In this document: piece by piece, positions 27,904 through 57,857 of the stretch
Position numbering within the stretch: position 1 is the first letter of the stretch
Layout: each line of letters starts with the position of its first letter
Assembly (NCBI GenBank): GCA_013416795.1
Contig: RQSC01000029.1
Coordinates: forward strand, 687,067-751,066
Length of the DNA: 64,000 bases
Source of the DNA: Prasinococcaceae sp. CCMP 1430
Taxonomy: Eukaryota > Plantae > Prasinodermophyta
Reading direction: 5' to 3'
Notes under the pieces: generated by a model
Seen by the model: the letters and a program-made list of their open reading frames with translations, nothing else
What the model was told of the DNA's origin: nothing
Database searches by the model: none
Position numbers and translations under genes: made by a program

Positions 27904-28491
27904 TTACGCGGAGCGCGCCGCCTTGAAAGCGTCCACTGCAGACAGCCGCCCCGCGCTGCCGTCGCCGTCGCTAACACCTGCGTCGGCGGCCTGCGCCTGT
28001 GCGAGCTGCGCCTGCGCAAGCTGCTTCAGCTGGCGCTCCTCGCTGTCCTCGAGCACCTCGCCCTCTCGCTCGAGCTCCCAACTGTCCTCGACAAGCGCTT
28101 GCACGCGCACAAACGCCTGCCGCAGCGCGCCGGAGAGCTTGTCCGCCTCATCCAGCAGGGTGTGCTGTAGCAGGCCCATCAGACAGCCAACGAATCTAGT
28201 TTCCTCGAGCATCCCTGCCTCGGCGAGCTGCGGCCCAAGCACACAAATCTCTGCGATGACCTCGTCGACGCGCTCGGCATCATCCAGCGCCATCGCGCGG
28301 GCCGCGCGCGTGCAGAGCTCCCGCAAGGCCAGAGCGTATGCTGGATCCATTTCGGCCCACTCGGCTGCGGCGGCCCTCTCTAGCTCGATGTGCTCCTCGT
28401 ACGCACCGAGCGCACCCTCCTGCTTCGCCCCGCGCTCGTCCAGGGCGTGGCCCTCGCGCTCGCGCCCGCCGGCGCCGGCGCCGGCGCCCCG
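27904..28491 (-). CDS. Uncharacterised helical protein, 5' end in gap
   Basis: Coding-biased frame EWAEMDPAYALALRELC...VLGPQLAEAGMLEETRFVGCLMGLLQH. Confidence 0.6.
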   Translation of the reverse strand, partial: RGAGAGAGGREREGHALDERGAKQEGALGAYEEHIELERAAAAEWAEMDPAYALALRELCTRAARAMALDDAERVDEVIAEICVLGPQLAEAGMLEETRFVGCLMGLLQHTLLDEADKLSGALRQAFVRVQALVEDSWELEREGEVLEDSEERQLKQLAQAQLAQAQAADAGVSDGDGSAGRLSAVDAFKAARSA

Positions 28492-28737
28492 NNNNNNNNN
28501 NNNNNNNNNNNNNNNNNNNNNNNNNNNNNNNNNNNNNNNNNNNNNNNNNNNNNNNNNNNNNNNNNNNNNNNNNNNNNNNNNNNNNNNNNNNNNNNNNNNN
28601 NNNNNNNNNNNNNNNNNNNNNNNNNNNNNNNNNNNNNNNNNNNNNNNNNNNNNNNNNNNNNNNNNNNNNNNNNNNNNNNNNNNNNNNNNNNNNNNNNNNN
28701 NNNNNNNNNNNNNNNNNNNNNNNNNNNNNNNNNNNNN
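28492..28737. other. Assembly gap (N run)
   Basis: 246 N. Confidence 1.
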
Positions 28738-29457
28738 CGGCCGCGCGTCGCGGCGGCGCGCCCGCCGACGCGGACGTTGCAGTGCGGACGAGGGCGCGGT
28801 GGGGGCAGCGGTGGGGGGCAGGGCCGCAGGGGCGGCCGCGCCGCCGCACGACCGGGGTCGGGCAGCGGTGAAGGCGCAGAGGACGACGAGGGTGTCGTTG
28901 ACAGCGGCGCGCGCGACACGCTGCGCGCGCTGGAGCGCCTGTCGCGCGACGCGAGCAAAGGAAGCGACGAAACCTCCGCTGGCCTGCAGGCGAACGAGGC
29001 CGCTGCCGATGTCGTGGAGCTCGAATTTGCCCTTCCCGACGGCGAGCGTGCCCCGCTGCGCCTGCGTACGCCGCCTGTGGGTGGGCAATACGTCTATGCG
29101 CGCGCGCGTTTGCCGCTCGGAGCGACCCTGCATGATGTCGGAAGTGAAATCGTCGTGGAAAGCGTGGAGGCTGACGGGGAGGCCGACAAAGCTGGCGTGC
29201 TCCCGGGCGACGCTCTCGCTGCCATCTCGGTCGCGGTGCCACGTATGACCTACCCTGGCGGCAACTTGCTGCTTGGGGGCGTTGGTCGGCCAGGGATTGC
29301 GTCGGGGTGGTACGTTGTGGCCGATGAATCGGAGGGGTCAGAGGAACAAGAGGGAGATGAGGAGGAAGGGGCCGCTTTCGCCGCGGCGCTGCGCGCTCTT
29401 GGCACCAACGCGAGACGCGCCGACCGTAGCGTCGCGCTCGTGCTCTGCCGAAGATAG
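28738..29457 (+). CDS. PDZ-like domain protein (possibly plastid-targeted), 5' end in or near gap
   Basis: LPLGATL...IVVESVEADGEADKAGVLPGDALAAI resembles a PDZ core. Confidence 0.55.
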   Translation, partial: RPRVAAARPPTRTLQCGRGRGGGSGGGQGRRGGRAAARPGSGSGEGAEDDEGVVDSGARDTLRALERLSRDASKGSDETSAGLQANEAAADVVELEFALPDGERAPLRLRTPPVGGQYVYARARLPLGATLHDVGSEIVVESVEADGEADKAGVLPGDALAAISVAVPRMTYPGGNLLLGGVGRPGIASGWYVVADESEGSEEQEGDEEEGAAFAAALRALGTNARRADRSVALVLCRR

Positions 29458-29649
29458 CGAGGCCGTGCGCTGAGGCATGGGGCCTACTGCGCTGCGGCAG
29501 AGCCTCTTTAGCTACTGGACGGAGCTGCTGAGCCCCGTAGAGTTGATGTGATTATATTGAGTTTGTAGTCTACACTATAGATTTGATGCGAAGCCCACCT
29601 ACGAGCCTGCCTTCAAGTGCGCCTCTGCAACCACCCTTTAGCTCGCACG

Positions 29650-32175
29650 CTACCCTGAGTTGGCTTCCAGTTTTGCCTGTATGAGCTTGAACATTTCCTC
29701 GCACTCGACTTGCCGAGCAAGGGGGGCCGAACGCGTTCGGTCGGGGTGCAGTCGCAACGCAGCACGGCGATACGCCGAGCGCACTTGCGCTGCCGAGTCG
29801 CCAGCGGGCGCAAAGCCGAAGGCAGAAAGCACGCCTGGGAGGTCCAGGTGCCCACCCTGCGCGTGCACGCACACAAATGCGCGGAAGTACGCGTATATTA
29901 GCACGTCAGGCATCGCACGAGAAGCGTCGAAGTCGACTTGACGCGCACGGATGCACGAGTGCCCATCGCAAAGTGCGTGGCGCAACGCACCTTCTCAGCC
30001 ACGCGAGCTGCCACATCCGCGCGCAGATTCTCGCGCTGTGCGGCCTCCGACGCGGCCGCCGATGCCACCGCCGCGGCCTCTTGCCGACGCCGCTCGAAAC
30101 GGTCAGGGGTACCGCGCTCGCCCTTGCCCTCGTCTCCACGCTCGCTCGCTCGCTCGCGAGCATTCGACTGCGCGCTCGACACTGCACTCGCAGAGGATGC
30201 AGGCCTGGCATTGCGCCGGGATTGGCAGTCAGGGCGGTCGTGGTCGTCCTGTGGTCCACGTGCGTTTGAGCCCGCTTGTGCGTCGTTTGCGTGCGCACGT
30301 GAGCCCTTGCCCGGGCTCTCGTAGCTTTCGTATCCACCCTCGTAGAGCTCCTCCTCCCAGCGGTACGGCTCCGGCGTCGGTGAGGAGCCACGCGCTCGCG
30401 CTCGAGCGTGCGCCGCCGCTGCGTCTGCCGGGGCCCGCCCACGCTGTTCCTCGGAAGCGTGGCGCGCAGTGGACTCGTTTGGAGCCCGCGATGCCAAGCT
30501 TTCCTCGTCATCCTCACCACGCGCGCCTGTAGGTGTGTCAGGCGCGTCTCCGCCCTTCGAGACGCCCGGCTCCAACACCGTCTGACGTCCACCGATGAAG
30601 GCCTCGATGGTGACGTCAACGTCCCATCTGCACGCTTCGAGCCATGATGCGGCATCGAGCGCACCCACGCCAGTGACGTCCATCACCTGGCATGCCGCCA
30701 GCGCGCGCGATGCGTTGCCGTCGCACATGCGGAGCGCGCGCAGCGCCTGCTCGGCGCTTAGTCCCTGCGCAAGACAGCCCAGAGCGTCGAGCTGGCGTAG
30801 CAGGCGTTGCTCCGCCAGGCCGTCCTCCTTGGCCTCCGCGGCACTCCCAACGCGGGCATCGTCGTCCATACTGCCCTCCCGTGTGTGTGGCGACGCATGT
30901 GCGTCGTCACTGCGCAGCGCCCCGACTTCGCGCGCAAGATCCACCTCGAGCGGTTCCTCGCCAAGCATCACCAGAGCGCGCGCGGACAGTTCGTCGCCGC
31001 AATAGAATGCGCCTCGCACCAGCCGCACGTGCAGGCCGGCCAATGGGGCCAGAACTTTGAAGAGGAGCGCTCGGTAGCGCGGCAAGCCGGCCTCGGTGAT
31101 GTCTGCGGGCGCTCGAGCAGCGCGACGGCACGGCAGGGCGGAGTCAGAACAGCGCTCGCCTGCTCGCCTACCCCCCCCCCCTTCCCCCACCCCCCCCCCC
31201 CCCCCCCCCCCCCCCCGCTTCCCCCGCTCTCGCGCCTCAATCTACGCGCGTCGCACCTCCAAGTGGCAACGCGAGTGACCCCCTCTCGCAACGGAGGCGC
31301 GCCGACACCTCACGCCAGCGCTCATCGGCTGCGTTCGCCTCGAACGCGGCAGCTGACTTGCTATTCGGCTGTCGTCGCTTTTTGGGAGAGACCCCGTCCA
31401 TCTGGTTGGCCACGATCACAGCCAGCGCGGCTGCCCGGCCCCGTTCATCCACGCCTGCATACGGCGCCATTTCCTCGGCCACATACTCGCACAGGGCCGC
31501 CAGGGCGGCGTCCCTGCCACGGTCCACGTAGACAACCTCGCGCGTGTCGGCGTAGAACGCTTCGAAGGAGCTTGGCGCATGCGGGGGGGCATCCGCCCGC
31601 ATCGCCTCCAGCGCCTGCAGCGACGGTAGCCGGCTCGTGCCTATTGCGTCTTCGTCGAACCCCCAAAGCTCGTAGTACCCATCGCACAGCTCCTCGTTCT
31701 CACGCACGCAGCATGTCACGAAGGCCACCGCCGCTTGCGCCTGACCCTCGGCGGAGGGGGGCGGCGCGGGCGGCGGTGAGGGGGAGCGCGAGCGCGCGTG
31801 CGCGTATGCGTGCTCCGACGGCTCGTACACAGAAGTTGCGTGTGCCCGCTCGTCCGCGGCTTGGAAGCGCTGCTGCTGCGCGCGCTGCTCCTCGAAGAAT
31901 GCGTACTGCGCGCGCTGTTCAGCCTCAAATTCCTCGTACGCCGTCTGCTCGGCGCGCCGCCGCCGAGCCTCCTCCTCCTCCTGCCACCGCTGGCCTCCCC
32001 CTCGCTCCCACCAGTCCTCTCCATGCGCGCGCTGCAGCGCTGGCGCGGTTGGCGACGCGCCGGCTCGCGCGCCGGCGTTGGCGCGGCGCGCGCGCTCCGC
32101 CGCAGCGGCGGCCTCGGCCTCGGAGGCGCTCAGTGCCATCGCCAGCAGCAGCTCCTCGTCGTCCTCGCCGTCCAT
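29650..32175 (-). CDS. UIM - EDR1/CTR1-type N-terminal domain - UBA-like x2 - C-terminal J domain protein, ~745 aa; exons 32175-31257, 31102-29991, 29856-29650
   Basis: EELLLAMALSASE (UIM); LCDGYYELWG...LPSLQAL...EVVYVDRGRDAAL...ALAVIVANQMDG...LPLG|DITEAGLPRYRALLFKVLA...RLVRG...VDL (EDR1 domain); two UBA-like repeats; AYRRAALRLHPD...EEMFKLI (J domain). Intron phases 1 and 0 fit. Confidence 0.75.
31171..31216. repeat. Interrupted poly-C tract (poly-G on the transcribed strand) in intron 1 of the EDR1-J gene
   Basis: Read directly from the sequence. Confidence 0.9.
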
Positions 32176-32388
32176 CGTCCGCCCGGGGCACGCACGCCCC
32201 CGCGCGCGCTCTGGAGCGGCCGGGACCGGCACGGATGCGGCGCACAGCTGGCGCTGCCGCCCCCACCAAAAAGCAACGATACCAAGATTATCCGTTTCTT
32301 ACAAAATGCGTCGTCCGGATAGAGGAGTGGCGCACAGTTGAGTGAGAGCCTGGCGGCGCGCGTCAGCAGGCTCCTGCGAGCTCCCGCG

Positions 32389-33246
32389 CTACTCGCCCGC
32401 CGGCGGCCTGCGCGCGACGAGGACCTCCGAGCACAAGAGCCCAAGGAAGTCCTCGCCTTCGCCGCACACGACGGCGCGCTCGAGCACCTCGAATCCGGCG
32501 CCCTCCGCGTATGGCGCCAGCGCCTGGGCTCGGCAGCCGCCGACGACGTGCGGCGTTAGGCTGTGAATGAGAGCCCAGACCGCCGCCGCAATGCGGCGAG
32601 CCACACCCGCTTCCTCCGGCGGTGGCGAGAGGCCCGCGAGGGCGAGCACGCCGCCAGGCCGCAGTGAGGTGCGCGCCTCGGCGAAGAACGCGCGCACGTC
32701 ACTGTCGCTCAGGAGGTCCAGCATGTACGTCGACACGACCAGGTCCAGAGGGCCACCCTCCTGTGCCGCCGCAAAGGCGGCCGCCTGCGATCCGTCTGTC
32801 TCCACGACGACGGCGCGCGTATCACCTCGCAGCCGCGTCCTGGCGTTCGATGCCTGGACGCTCGAGAGATCAACGCAGGTGTAGCGCTGGCACGCAGGCG
32901 CGAGCTCGTCGCCGAGCAGCTGCGCCGCCAGCTTCCCCGAACCACTCCCCACCTCGAGCACGTGTCGCACTCGCTCATCGGCCACGGCATGCGCGAGTGC
33001 CGCGCGCAGCGCCGCGACCGCGTTGCGCCCATACGAAGACCCTGAGTCGTCAACTGTCTGCCCGGCGCGGTCGTACACGCGCTGTGCTGCGCTGCGGCTC
33101 AGCGTGCGGCGCGTATCAAGCGGCGCCGCGCCACGCGGCGCCGAGCGGCGGCACCGTGACTGAAGAAGGGCTCGCGCCCGTGCTCGCGCCAGCGCCTGCG
33201 GCTGCGGCTGCTGCTGCGCCGCGGGGCGTGAGGCCATCGCCCGCAT
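32389..33246 (-). CDS. Class I SAM-dependent methyltransferase, intronless
   Basis: Motif I VLEVGSGSGKLA, YTCVDLS, DLVVSTYMLDLL, SLRPGGVL. Start uncertain. Confidence 0.8.
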   Translation of the reverse strand: MRAMASRPAAQQQPQPQALARARARALLQSRCRRSAPRGAAPLDTRRTLSRSAAQRVYDRAGQTVDDSGSSYGRNAVAALRAALAHAVADERVRHVLEVGSGSGKLAAQLLGDELAPACQRYTCVDLSSVQASNARTRLRGDTRAVVVETDGSQAAAFAAAQEGGPLDLVVSTYMLDLLSDSDVRAFFAEARTSLRPGGVLALAGLSPPPEEAGVARRIAAAVWALIHSLTPHVVGGCRAQALAPYAEGAGFEVLERAVVCGEGEDFLGLLCSEVLVARRPPAGE

Positions 33247-33502
33247 GGCTCCGCGCGTCACCTCAGGAGGGGCCGAGGCTGCGCCCGCGTGCCCGGCGTG
33301 TCGCGGCTTGGAGTGCGGTGACCAGCACCACGGCCGCGCCGCTGCGACGCGCAGCACCCCCGCGGTGCGCTGCGTCACAGCGTGCAGGGCGATGTGGCAG
33401 CGCAGTCTCCCACCACAAACCACTCACCGCCCACCTGCCCACACCAGCGCACTCGGCGCTGCTTCGACGACACGCCACGCCCACGAAACCATAATTCAGG
33501 TT

Positions 33503-44871: not shown

Positions 44872-45714
44872 NNNNNNNNNNNNNNNNNNNNNNNNNNNNN
44901 NNNNNNNNNNNNNNNNNNNNNNNNNNNNNNNNNNNNNNNNNNNNNNNNNNNNNNNNNNNNNNNNNNNNNNNNNNNNNNNNNNNNNNNNNNNNNNNNNNNN
45001 NNNNNNNNNNNNNNNNNNNNNNNNNNNNNNNNNNNNNNNNNNNNNNNNNNNNNNNNNNNNNNNNNNNNNNNNNNNNNNNNNNNNNNNNNNNNNNNNNNNN
45101 NNNNNNNNNNNNNNNNNNNNNNNNNNNNNNNNNNNNNNNNNNNNNNNNNNNNNNNNNNNNNNNNNNNNNNNNNNNNNNNNNNNNNNNNNNNNNNNNNNNN
45201 NNNNNNNNNNNNNNNNNNNNNNNNNNNNNNNNNNNNNNNNNNNNNNNNNNNNNNNNNNNNNNNNNNNNNNNNNNNNNNNNNNNNNNNNNNNNNNNNNNNN
45301 NNNNNNNNNNNNNNNNNNNNNNNNNNNNNNNNNNNNNNNNNNNNNNNNNNNNNNNNNNNNNNNNNNNNNNNNNNNNNNNNNNNNNNNNNNNNNNNNNNNN
45401 NNNNNNNNNNNNNNNNNNNNNNNNNNNNNNNNNNNNNNNNNNNNNNNNNNNNNNNNNNNNNNNNNNNNNNNNNNNNNNNNNNNNNNNNNNNNNNNNNNNN
45501 NNNNNNNNNNNNNNNNNNNNNNNNNNNNNNNNNNNNNNNNNNNNNNNNNNNNNNNNNNNNNNNNNNNNNNNNNNNNNNNNNNNNNNNNNNNNNNNNNNNN
45601 NNNNNNNNNNNNNNNNNNNNNNNNNNNNNNNNNNNNNNNNNNNNNNNNNNNNNNNNNNNNNNNNNNNNNNNNNNNNNNNNNNNNNNNNNNNNNNNNNNNN
45701 NNNNNNNNNNNNNN
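44872..45714. other. Assembly gap, probably containing the first CK1 exon(s)
   Basis: 843 N. Confidence 1.
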
Positions 45715-57543: not shown

Positions 57544-57857
57544 NNNNNNNNNNNNNNNNNNNNNNNNNNNNNNNNNNNNNNNNNNNNNNNNNNNNNNNNN
57601 NNNNNNNNNNNNNNNNNNNNNNNNNNNNNNNNNNNNNNNNNNNNNNNNNNNNNNNNNNNNNNNNNNNNNNNNNNNNNNNNNNNNNNNNNNNNNNNNNNNN
57701 NNNNNNNNNNNNNNNNNNNNNNNNNNNNNNNNNNNNNNNNNNNNNNNNNNNNNNNNNNNNNNNNNNNNNNNNNNNNNNNNNNNNNNNNNNNNNNNNNNNN
57801 NNNNNNNNNNNNNNNNNNNNNNNNNNNNNNNNNNNNNNNNNNNNNNNNNNNNNNNNN
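57544..57857. other. Assembly gap
   Basis: 314 N. Confidence 1.

What the first reader, a model, noticed from the sequence alone, without database searches (positions are those of the whole stretch)
29650..32175. Unusual architecture: UIM + EDR1/CTR1 domain + UBA x2 + J domain, with no kinase
The EDR1 domain is known as the N-terminal regulatory region of plant Raf-like kinases (CTR1, EDR1; GLCRHRALLFK). Here it reads GLPRYRALLFK, lacking the Cys and His, and is joined by phase-compatible introns to ubiquitin-binding modules and an HPD-containing J domain instead of a kinase. Inferred: an Hsp70 co-chaperone that recognises ubiquitinated cargo through a pseudo-enzyme scaffold. It parallels the UBA+J design of yeast Swa2/auxilin and may shed light on where the CTR1 regulatory domain came from.
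Basis: partly seen in the sequence, partly recalled or inferred. Interest (0 to 1): 0.75.

Follow-up and report, generated by a model that had tools for sequence, protein, structure and literature searches.

The report
Ubiquitin-binding J-protein with dead EDR1 peptidase domain
A green picoalga (Prasinoderma coloniale) gene joins the "EDR1/CTR1" domain, known from plant stress and ethylene kinases, to ubiquitin-binding modules and an Hsp70-recruiting J domain instead of a kinase; the design is real, is shared with other marine green algae, and I found no paper describing it.

Summary
Minus-strand gene 32175..29650 has three exons. An RNA-derived contig skips intron 1 exactly. Both junctions are mirrored in an intronless 743-aa ortholog on marine metagenome DNA. 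The gene is already annotated as Prasinoderma coloniale PRCOL_00002172.

It encodes four modules:
- An N-terminal UIM.
- A PF14381 EDR1/CTR1/ARMC3 transglutaminase-like domain.
- A tandem UBA-like pair, closest to TNK1, TDP2 and p47.
- A C-terminal auxilin-type J domain with an intact HPD.

There is no kinase. At least nine further 50%-identity cluster representatives carry EDR1 plus a C-terminal J domain. They include a Pyramimonas transcript and abundant Tara Oceans picoeukaryote contigs.

All ten members lack the transglutaminase-type Cys and His, so the domain is a pseudo-peptidase. That is true of nearly all PF14381 proteins, plant kinases included. The window's RYR (His to Tyr) is unique among about 130 sequences.

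A UIM consensus also precedes the EDR1 domain in 26 of 33 kinases. This suggests an old UIM–EDR1 unit wired either to a kinase or to Hsp70.

The proposed function, a ubiquitin-directed Hsp70 co-chaperone, is inferred and not shown. I found no paper describing the architecture. I class it as a new variant of a known kind, of moderate interest.

The parts
31257..32175 (-). Exon 1 (ATG at 32175; 306 codons plus 1 base): UIM, an acidic/Gln-rich spacer, and the N-terminal two thirds of the EDR1 domain
   Evidence: Translation. Identical to P0170 residues 1-306. RNA contig X1 covers 31257-31955. The start MDGEDDEE.. parallels the ortholog's MDELDEE...
32119..32163 (-). UIM (DDEELLLAMALSASE)
   Evidence: It fits Ac-Ac-Ac-Ac-phi-x-x-A-x-x-x-S-x-x-Ac. 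It is the only match in the six-frame translation of the window. It is conserved as EETQLALALSASE in P0002. Pfam does not call it.
31103..31256 (-). Intron 1 (154 nt, GT..AG, phase 1; holds a G homopolymer with a longest run of 27)
   Evidence: Skipped exactly in an X1 contig of 1398 nt, joint 31102|31257, ends CT..AC on the + strand. Boundaries.
29991..31102 (-). Exon 2: C-terminal third of the EDR1 domain, the tandem UBA-like pair, a charged low-complexity linker, and the first helix of the J region
   Evidence: Translation. Pfam. RNA contigs X1 cover 30404-31102 and 30056-30372.
30915..31719 (-). EDR1/CTR1/ARMC3 peptidase-like domain (P0170 residues 153-369), interrupted by intron 1
   Evidence: PF14381 scores 81.8 bits, E 7.5e-23, on P0170. 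AlphaFold model has pLDDT 85.7. VIA-align Z is 6.0-6.9 to factor XIII, TglA, TG2/TG3 and LapG. ESM-Atlas shape matches to EDR1 kinases and ARMC3 have rmsd 2.8-3.7 A over about 200-240 residues.
31056..31088 (-). GLPRYRALLFK motif: Pro at the transglutaminase-type nucleophile position, Tyr in place of the near-invariant His
   Evidence: Sequence. Family comparison: H181 is nearly invariant in A2, and Y is also seen in strain variant P0001.
30594..30812 (-). Tandem UBA-like pair (P0170 residues 404-476)
   Evidence: UBA_4 scores 24.7 bits against a cut-off of 21.8, in 2 stretches. VIA-align gives TDP2 UBA Z 7.2 with rmsd 0.6 A over 41 residues, Dcn1, FAF1, p47 and Dsk2 UBAs, and UBAP1 SOUBA over 76 residues. 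Foldseek gives TNK1 UBA at probability 0.99. The family profile against TNK1 UBA gives E 0.1.
29857..29990 (-). Intron 2 (134 nt, GTGCGT..GCAG, phase 0)
   Evidence: Sequence. The public model P0170 uses the same junction. X1 has no depth at 29817-30055, and an X3 contig stops matching at 29858. Orthologs read ..AERLAQAVEGLDLADTL.. without interruption. No RNA contig bridges it directly.
29650..29856 (-). Exon 3: J domain helices I-III plus the stop (TAG 29652-29650)
   Evidence: Translation. DnaJ PF00226 scores 27.9 bits. Model has pLDDT 94.3. Closest structures are auxilin-type J domains. RNA contig X1 covers 29515-29816 and so includes the 3' UTR.
29740..29748 (-). HPD tripeptide of the J domain
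   Evidence: Sequence. Invariant in all ten family members.
30182..30298 (-). 117-nt in-frame stretch that the public annotation removes as a further intron (GTGCGC..TGCAG)
   Evidence: P0170 lacks these 39 codons. X1 contig 30056-30372 keeps them without a gap. So it is either exon or an alternative intron.

Best explanation
Shown:
- The locus is one three-exon gene (Prasinoderma coloniale PRCOL_00002172).
- Its product is a class-III (type C) J-domain protein built as UIM, then an EDR1/CTR1/ARMC3 transglutaminase-like domain without the Cys and His of the catalytic triad, then a tandem UBA-like pair, then a charged linker, then a C-terminal auxilin-type J domain with an intact HPD.
- It belongs to a conserved family in prasinophyte-grade marine green algae.

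Inferred:
- The J domain docks on cytosolic Hsp70 and triggers its ATPase.
- The UIM and the UBA pair bind ubiquitin or ubiquitin chains.
- The dead peptidase-like domain keeps a substrate-binding cleft and serves as a binding scaffold.
- Together they would bring Hsp70 to ubiquitinated proteins or assemblies for remodelling, extraction or hand-over to degradation. This is the logic of DNAJB2/HSJ1 (J plus UIMs) and Swa2 (UBA plus J).
- The UIM-EDR1 unit is probably the same unit that plant Raf-like kinases (CTR1/EDR1 type) carry in front of their kinase domain. If so, this family is the Hsp70-wired sibling of the kinase-wired form.
For: Gene structure:
- Intron 1 is skipped exactly in an RNA-derived contig.
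- Both junctions are identical in the public model P0170.
- They are mirrored in the 743-aa ortholog, which is one uninterrupted ORF on Tara metagenome DNA contigs of up to 23 kb.

Domains:
- PF14381 scores 81.8 bits, UBA_4 24.7 bits and DnaJ 27.9 bits.
- The J-region profile matches DNAJB8, Sis1, Ydj1, DnaJ and auxilin at E 2.5e-8 to 3e-4.
- The J model has pLDDT 94. It is nearest JAC1 and the auxilin J domain crystallised on Hsc70, TM 0.77.
- The EDR1+UBA model has pLDDT 85.7. It shows a transglutaminase-like core and UBA matches at rmsd 0.6-1.5 A, several of them UBA-ubiquitin complexes.

Conservation:
- Ten 50%-identity cluster representatives share EDR1 plus a C-terminal J domain. RxRALLFK, VDL, a UBA signature (A..A...C....W) and R.AYR.A...HPD are invariant.
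- Triad loss is family-wide.
- The strict UIM consensus is unique in the window. A UIM consensus lies upstream of the EDR1 domain in 26 of 33 kinases against 1.4 expected.

Literature:
- PF14381 is classed with transglutaminase-like papain-fold peptidases near MEROPS C71 and C93 (PMC10318531).
Against: - No biochemical evidence exists for any step. Ubiquitin binding, Hsp70 stimulation and the ligand of the EDR1 domain are all inferred from family membership.
- Pfam scores for UBA and DnaJ sit close to their cut-offs. The full-length P0170 falls below both (24.2 and 17.8 bits).
- Only 3 of 9 J-type members match the strict UIM pattern; the rest are degenerate.
- UBA-like folds of the W-D type (TAP-C, Dcn1, EF-Ts) do not all bind ubiquitin.
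- The Prasinoderma EDR1 domain sits on a long branch (1.13) and has lost the near-invariant His, so its function may have drifted.
- No RNA contig bridges intron 2.
Confidence: 0.6

Rival explanations
1. Partner-directed trafficking or uncoating adaptor. The EDR1 domain, not ubiquitin, is the main targeting device. It would bind a specific protein partner or membrane compartment, as the CTR1 N-terminus binds ethylene receptors and EDR1 is recruited to TGN/early endosomes by KEG (my knowledge of the plant literature). The auxilin-type J domain would drive Hsp70-dependent disassembly of a coat or complex there. The UIM and UBA would be regulatory, for example through coupled ubiquitination or autoinhibition.
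For: - The J domain is structurally closest to auxilin and JAC1. It is C-terminal, has the extra N-terminal helix and ends after helix III.
- The EDR1 domain is the most conserved and largest module.
- Strict UIMs are missing in most family members.
Against: - No clathrin box, FxDxF, NPF or W-box is found in any of the ten members, and DPF occurs in only two.
- There is no PTEN-like or TPR domain.
- The UBA pair is conserved with invariant residues across all ten, which argues that it is a core function.
Confidence: 0.25
2. Active enzyme. The EDR1 domain would be a working peptidase, deubiquitinase or transglutaminase using a non-canonical nucleophile, with the UIM and UBA presenting ubiquitinated substrate.
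For: - The fold is transglutaminase/papain-like.
- The Asp of the triad (VDL) is invariant.
- Ubiquitin-binding modules next to a papain-fold domain are typical of DUBs (general knowledge).
Against: - The nucleophile position is P/P/E/T/P/A/E/A/E/S in the ten members.
- The transglutaminase-His position is S/T/S/E/C/A/A/A/S/S.
- No alternative conserved Cys, Ser or His lies nearby. The only invariant Cys is in the UBA region.
Confidence: 0.04
3. Annotation artefact. The J-domain exon, or the UIM/EDR1 exon, would belong to a separate neighbouring gene, and the fusion would exist only in gene models.
For: - No single RNA contig spans all three exons.
- Intron 2 is not bridged.
- Run X1 is only guessed to be RNA.
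Against: - Intron 1 is removed exactly in an X1 contig.
- The ortholog P0002/P0165 encodes all four modules in one uninterrupted ORF on DNA contigs.
- Eight further cluster representatives have EDR1 plus a C-terminal J domain in one protein.
- Exon 3 has no start codon of its own upstream of the J domain, and it is in phase.
Confidence: 0.02

Closest known systems
Plant Raf-like MAPKKKs CTR1 and EDR1 (PF14381 N-terminal domain plus kinase)
   Same: They share the PF14381 domain with the RHRALLFK core and the VDL strand. They mostly lack the transglutaminase-type His as well. A UIM-consensus motif precedes the domain in 26 of 33 kinases sampled. The nearest non-J relatives are green-lineage kinases from Cymbomonas, Chlorokybus, Mesostigma and Myrmecia.
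   Different: This protein has no kinase domain. A tandem UBA and a J domain follow instead. The nucleophile position is Pro, and the near-invariant His is Tyr in P. coloniale.
ARMC3 (armadillo repeats plus C-terminal PF14381 domain, animals)
   Same: It has the same domain fold, with ESM-Atlas shape matches at rmsd 2.8-3.0 A over about 200 residues. Here too the domain is attached to a non-kinase partner module.
   Different: The partner modules are Arm/HEAT repeats, not UIM, UBA and J. It belongs to a different lineage (Metazoa).
DNAJB2 / HSJ1 (J domain plus two UIMs)
   Same: It is a J-domain co-chaperone carrying ubiquitin-interacting motifs, known to couple Hsp70 to ubiquitinated clients (general knowledge; review PMC7463752 listed). 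Its J domain is matched by the family profile (2lgw, E 5e-6).
   Different: HSJ1 has an N-terminal class-B J domain with a G/F region. It has no EDR1 domain and no UBA. In this protein the J domain is C-terminal and auxilin-like.
Auxilin / GAK / yeast Swa2 / Arabidopsis JAC1 (C-terminal auxilin-type J domains)
   Same: The J domain is C-terminal, has an extra N-terminal helix and ends after helix III. These are the best structural matches (3ag7, 2qwo_B, TM 0.77). Swa2 also carries a UBA (PMC4689296, listed).
   Different: This family has no clathrin-binding motifs and no PTEN-like or TPR domain. The targeting modules are entirely different, so it is not an auxilin ortholog.
TNK1 C-terminal ubiquitin-association domain
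   Same: It is the closest solved relative of the UBA pair. Foldseek probability is 0.99, VIA Z is 5.6-6.8, and a borderline profile match covers both halves, including the W-D motif.
   Different: The sequence match is not significant on its own (E 0.1). TNK1 is an animal tyrosine kinase.
Transglutaminase-like cysteine peptidases (LapG/C93, PeiW/C71, TgpA, factor XIII core)
   Same: The core fold is shared, with VIA Z 6.0-6.9. PF01841 is hit weakly by family members. The classification is given in PMC10318531.
   Different: The catalytic Cys and His are absent in this family.

Membership tests
PF14381 EDR1/CTR1/ARMC3 peptidase-like domain | Pfam profile match above the gathering score (27 bits) | tested here: met
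   Exon 1 scores 30.5 bits and exon 2 scores 39.6 bits. The public spliced protein P0170 scores 81.8 bits over profile positions 11-202.
PF14381 EDR1/CTR1/ARMC3 peptidase-like domain | Shared fold with EDR1 kinases and ARMC3 | tested here: met
   The model has pLDDT 85.7. Atlas shape matches give TM by query 0.47-0.62 and rmsd 2.8-4.5 A over 181-243 residues.
Active transglutaminase-like / papain-fold cysteine peptidase | Cys-His-Asp catalytic triad | tested here: not met
   The Cys position is Pro. The His position (HAWN in P0102) is Ser. Only the Asp (VDL) is kept. The same holds in all ten J-type members.
J-domain protein (Hsp40), class III/C | J-domain profile match with an HPD tripeptide between helices II and III | tested here: met
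   PF00226 scores 27.9 bits against a cut-off of 27.8 on exon 3. The family profile against PDB J domains gives E 2.5e-8. HPD is invariant. The model has pLDDT 94.3 and a J fold.
J-domain protein (Hsp40), class III/C | Stimulates Hsp70 ATPase | not testable with these tools
   This needs biochemistry.
J-domain protein, class I/II | G/F-rich region and/or zinc-finger and C-terminal client-binding domains after an N-terminal J domain | tested here: not met
   The J domain is at the extreme C-terminus, and there are no DnaJ_C or DnaJ_CXXCXGXG hits.
UBA / UBA-like domain | Three-helix bundle matching UBA profiles and structures | tested here: met
   UBA_4 scores 24.7 bits against a cut-off of 21.8. 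TDP2 UBA gives Z 7.2 at rmsd 0.6 A over 41 residues. FAF1, p47, Dcn1 and Dsk2 UBAs also match.
UBA / UBA-like domain | Binds ubiquitin | not testable with these tools
Some UBA-like folds do not bind ubiquitin.
UIM (ubiquitin-interacting motif) | Consensus Ac-Ac-Ac-Ac-phi-x-x-Ala-x-x-x-Ser-x-x-Ac | tested here: met
   DDEELLLAMALSASE fits fully. It is the single match in the six frames of the window and is conserved in P0002. The Pfam HMM did not report it.
Auxilin / Swa2 family | Clathrin-binding motifs plus a PTEN-like (auxilin) or TPR (Swa2) domain upstream of the J domain | tested here: not met
   No clathrin box, FxDxF, NPF or W-box in ten members. No such Pfam domains. Only the J-domain subtype resembles auxilin.
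CTR1/EDR1-type Raf-like MAPKKK | C-terminal protein kinase domain | tested here: not met
   No Pkinase or PK_Tyr_Ser-Thr hit and no HRDLKxxN motif. The ORF ends in the J domain, followed by a 3' UTR that is covered by an RNA contig.

The most novel reading that the evidence does not exclude
The UIM-EDR1 unit could be an ancient reader of ubiquitin conjugates: a dead transglutaminase/papain-fold "pseudo-deubiquitinase" with a built-in UIM. Early green algae would have wired it either to a Raf-like kinase (the CTR1/EDR1 line) or to Hsp70 through a J domain (this family). If so, the long-unexplained N-terminal domains of CTR1, EDR1 and their relatives would sense ubiquitinated partners, and this algal family would be the simplest system in which to test that.
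Probability: 0.2. Interest if true: 0.75.

Novelty: new variant of a known kind. Interest (0 to 1): 0.47.

Why it matters
The EDR1/CTR1 domain sits at the head of ethylene, abscisic-acid/osmotic-stress and immunity kinases in plants, yet what it does at the molecular level is unclear. The large, named clusters show it only with kinases (plants) or armadillo repeats (animal ARMC3).

A third, conserved architecture surrounds it with two kinds of ubiquitin-binding module and an Hsp70-recruiting J domain. A UIM also precedes the domain in most kinases. Together these point to a ubiquitin-related role for the domain and make that idea directly testable with small recombinant proteins.

The finding also adds a lineage-specific J-protein class to the chaperone repertoire of abundant marine picoalgae.

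Tried and rejected
Searches that gave nothing useful:
- Word-index protein searches with the full ortholog and with the family alignment returned only self or near-self hits. The 8000-candidate list was swamped by low-complexity words, so these blanks are uninformative.
- The scan of bacterial and archaeal genome contigs found nothing, as expected for a eukaryotic family.
- PDB sequence searches with the EDR1 domain or the EDR1+UBA profile gave nothing significant for the peptidase-like part.
- Foldseek against PDB gave no hit at E <= 0.001 for either model. Fold calls therefore rest on VIA-align Z values of 6-7, on the consistency of the hit lists and on the Pfam profile matches.
- Pfam did not call the UIM.
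- The search for clathrin or adaptor motifs was negative.
- Literature searches for EDR1 with J domain, DnaJ, UBA or ARMC3 found no description of the architecture. The library excludes most subscription journals.

Readings rejected:
- Separate genes, rejected on ortholog and RNA evidence.
- An active peptidase, rejected because the triad is absent.
- An auxilin ortholog, rejected because there are no clathrin modules.

Steps not taken:
- I did not build or search my own joined 745-aa model. I used the public spliced protein P0170 and the intronless ortholog P0002 instead.
- The organisms behind most J-type clusters could not be named. Only Prasinoderma and Pyramimonas are labelled. The 64% GC, compact Tara contigs carrying P0025/P0200 look Micromonas-like, but that is a guess.
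Full report
**The sequence and the gene model**

The region is about 68-70% GC. On the minus strand there are three open stretches. They are linked by two short introns with the same boundary style (GTGCG...GCAG).
- Exon 1 is 32175-31257.
- Intron 1 is 31256-31103 (154 nt, phase 1). It contains a G homopolymer with a longest run of 27.
- Exon 2 is 31102-29991.
- Intron 2 is 29990-29857 (134 nt, phase 0).
- Exon 3 is 29856-29650, ending in TAG.

The junction residues read ...SLALPLG-D-ITEAGLPRYRALLFK... and ...AARVAEK-GGHLDLPGVL....

**Transcript evidence**

Laying public runs on 29500-32450 gave one decisive result. In run X1 (organism A, labelled RNA by guess) a 1398-nt contig joins 31102 to 31257. 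It skips exactly the 154 nt of intron 1, with CT..AC on the + strand, which is GT..AG on the gene strand.

X1 contigs also cover exon 3 with the 3' UTR (29515-29816) and two stretches of exon 2. X1 has no depth over 29817-30055, which includes intron 2. A metatranscriptome contig (X3) matches exon 3 and stops matching at 29858, at the predicted acceptor.

No contig bridges intron 2, so that junction is not shown directly by RNA.

**Identity of the gene and independent support for the fusion**

Exact-sequence look-ups show that the exon-1 ORF clusters with EukProt protein EP00793_Prasinoderma_coloniale_P002690, PRCOL_00002172-RA (P0170, 706 aa). P0170 uses both of my junctions.

P0170 additionally removes 39 codons (30298-30182, an in-frame GT..AG stretch). 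The X1 contig at 30056-30372 keeps them, so that intron is unsupported or alternative.

A 57%-identical ortholog (P0002/P0165, 743 aa) carries all modules in one uninterrupted ORF. It occurs on a transcript-like 3.3-kb contig and on metagenomic DNA contigs of up to 23 kb, including a Tara Oceans METAG scaffold. Its sequence runs straight through both junction equivalents. The three exons therefore encode one protein.

Whole-protein work used P0170 and P0002.

**Domains**

- *UIM.* DDEELLLAMALSASE fits the UIM consensus completely. The strict pattern occurs once in the six-frame translation of the 64-kb window, and that hit is this one. The ortholog has EETQLALALSASE. Pfam's UIM model did not fire.
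- *EDR1 domain.* PF14381, now named "EDR1/CTR1/ARMC3, peptidase-like", matches both exon pieces above the gathering score. In P0170 it matches as one 81.8-bit hit.
  - An AlphaFold model of P0170 residues 136-476 with a 44-sequence alignment has pLDDT 85.7 and pTM 0.71.
  - VIA-align places residues about 25-245 with transglutaminase cores and relatives: factor XIII Z 6.9, TglA 6.7, TG3 6.5, TG2 6.3, LapG 6.0, PNGase and XPC/Rad4. Each Z is modest, but the list is uniform.
  - This agrees with the published classification of PF14381 next to MEROPS C71 and C93 (PMC10318531).
  - ESM-Atlas shape matches are plant EDR1-type kinases and animal ARMC3.
- *UBA pair.* UBA_4 scores 24.7 bits against a cut-off of 21.8 on the isolated region.
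  - The second three-helix bundle superposes on the TDP2 UBA bound to ubiquitin at 0.6 A over 41 residues (Z 7.2), and on Dcn1, FAF1 and p47 UBAs.
  - The first bundle superposes on Dsk2 and hHR23A UBAs.
  - The pair as a whole superposes on UBAP1 SOUBA and the TNK1 UBA. Foldseek gives the TNK1 UBA a probability of 0.99, and the family profile gives a borderline match to it.
- *J domain.* PF00226 scores 27.9 bits against a cut-off of 27.8, with HPD at 29748-29740.
  - The profile of the ten family C-termini hits solved J domains at E 2.5e-8 and below.
  - The model has pLDDT 94.3. Its best structural matches are auxilin-type J domains: Arabidopsis JAC1 and bovine auxilin cross-linked to Hsc70, TM by query 0.77.
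  - It has the extra N-terminal helix and ends after helix III.
- *No kinase.* There is no kinase Pfam hit or kinase motif.

**The family**

An exhaustive phmmer search of 1.84 billion cluster representatives with the ortholog's EDR1+UBA region found only 201 proteins at E <= 0.001.

Among the best 150, nine besides the query's own cluster have an EDR1 domain and a C-terminal J domain: P0004, P0005, P0007, P0008, P0020, P0024, P0025, P0058, and the Prasinoderma proteins.
- P0005 is a Pyramimonas MMETSP transcript.
- P0025 stands for 145 sequences seen on many marine metagenome contigs. Those contigs show compact, intronless genes and 64% GC.

The ten-sequence alignment shows invariant RxRALLFK, VDL, a UBA signature, and R.AYR.A...HPD...E..FK.

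In a maximum-likelihood tree of the EDR1 domains, the J-type proteins lie on one side of a branch, but with support of only 49. Seven of the ten form a clade with support 86. The Prasinoderma pair sits on a long branch. A single origin is compatible with the data but not demonstrated.

The nearest non-J relatives are green-lineage kinases from Cymbomonas, Chlorokybus, Mesostigma and Myrmecia. None of the large ESM-Atlas clusters combines PF14381 with DnaJ; they are kinase or ARMC3 types.

**The catalytic residues**

The G-L-C position corresponds to the nucleophile at the start of the transglutaminase core helix. Only P0102/P0219 (WD40 + EDR1 + kinase, from metagenomes) keep C...HAWN...D, and they also reach the PF01841 Transglut_core threshold region.

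In all ten J-type proteins the Cys position is P/E/T/A/S and the transglutaminase-His position is S/T/E/C/A. The Asp is invariant. Most plant kinases also lack that His, and many lack the Cys (GLS/GLA). "Pseudo-enzyme" therefore describes nearly the whole Pfam family, not this protein in particular.

Its replacement by Tyr is seen only in P. coloniale strains (P0001, P0170). The closest ortholog keeps His.

**UIM and EDR1 travel together**

A UIM-consensus match lies upstream of the EDR1 domain in 26 of 33 kinases with enough N-terminal sequence, typically EE[FY]Q[VI]QLALA[IL]S. Shuffles predict 1.4.
- In the J-type family, 3 of 9 match strictly and others are degenerate.
- Gene-family surveys have occasionally noted a UIM in Raf-like MAPKKKs (PMC4432876).
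- I found no paper that links it to the EDR1 domain.

**Mechanism**

The architecture and its conservation are shown. The function is inferred from the established roles of the parts:
- J domains with HPD activate Hsp70.
- UIMs and UBAs bind ubiquitin.
- Inactive papain-fold and transglutaminase-fold domains commonly act as binding modules.

The simplest reading is a class-III J-protein that brings Hsp70 to ubiquitinated clients or assemblies. This is analogous to DNAJB2/HSJ1 (J plus UIMs) and, in layout, to Swa2 (UBA ... C-terminal auxilin-type J).

The main rival is a partner- or membrane-directed auxilin-like adaptor in which the EDR1 domain does the targeting. Against it, no clathrin or adaptor motifs are present. 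An active enzyme and a mis-fused gene model are both very unlikely.

**Novelty and score**

All four modules are known, the gene is in a public annotation, and ubiquitin-binding J-proteins exist. The combination with an EDR1 domain, and its conservation across prasinophyte-grade algae, appears undescribed in the searchable literature. I class it as a new variant of a known kind, interest about 0.47.

The more ambitious reading is that UIM-EDR1 is an ancient ubiquitin-conjugate reader shared with CTR1/EDR1 kinases. The evidence does not exclude it, and it would be of clear interest to plant-signalling researchers.

**Limits**

- Taxon labels exist for only two lineages.
- Two word-index searches were uninformative.
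- Fold matches are of moderate strength.

Noticed in passing
window 30182-30298 (minus strand): The public gene model (P0170) splices out this 117-nt in-frame GT..AG stretch (39 codons). The RNA-derived contig of run X1 (30056-30372) retains it. It is therefore either an annotation error or an alternative intron.
   Followed up: partly
window 31167-31227 (inside intron 1): There is a long G homopolymer (longest run 27 G, with more G-rich sequence around it). Read laying says reads seem cut there, so the assembled length of this tract is probably unreliable. It lies in an intron and does not affect the protein.
   Followed up: no
P0161 (478 aa, Logan contig of a related strain); equivalent to window 29857-29990: In a closely related strain, intron 2 is open in frame, so a prokaryote-style gene call reads from exon 2 through the intron into the J domain. 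This shows that the J exon lies next to exon 2 in that strain too.
   Followed up: partly
P0102 / P0219 (JGI metagenome proteins): These are EDR1-domain kinases, one with N-terminal WD40 repeats. Unlike nearly all other family members they keep a full transglutaminase-type Cys...HAWN...Asp triad and reach the PF01841 cut-off region. They are candidates for a still-active peptidase-kinase fusion and for the ancestral state of the domain.
   Followed up: partly
EDR1-domain kinases among P0006-P0138: A UIM-consensus motif (EE[FY]Q[VI]QLALA[IL]S) lies about 180-200 residues upstream of the RHRALLFK motif in 26 of 33 kinases, against 1.4 expected from shuffles. The UIM-EDR1 pairing seems to be a general feature of the family that Pfam does not annotate.
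   Followed up: partly
window 32392-33423 (minus strand): The upstream neighbour, about 215 bp from the ATG, is a class-I SAM-dependent methyltransferase (Methyltransf_12/25/11, E 1e-12). The spacing shows how compact this genome is.
   Followed up: partly
window 28492-28737, 44872-45714, 57544-57857: These are assembly gaps (runs of N). The first lies about 900 bp downstream of this gene, inside the neighbouring plus-strand ORF (28390-29457). The part of that ORF after the gap has no Pfam hit.
   Followed up: no
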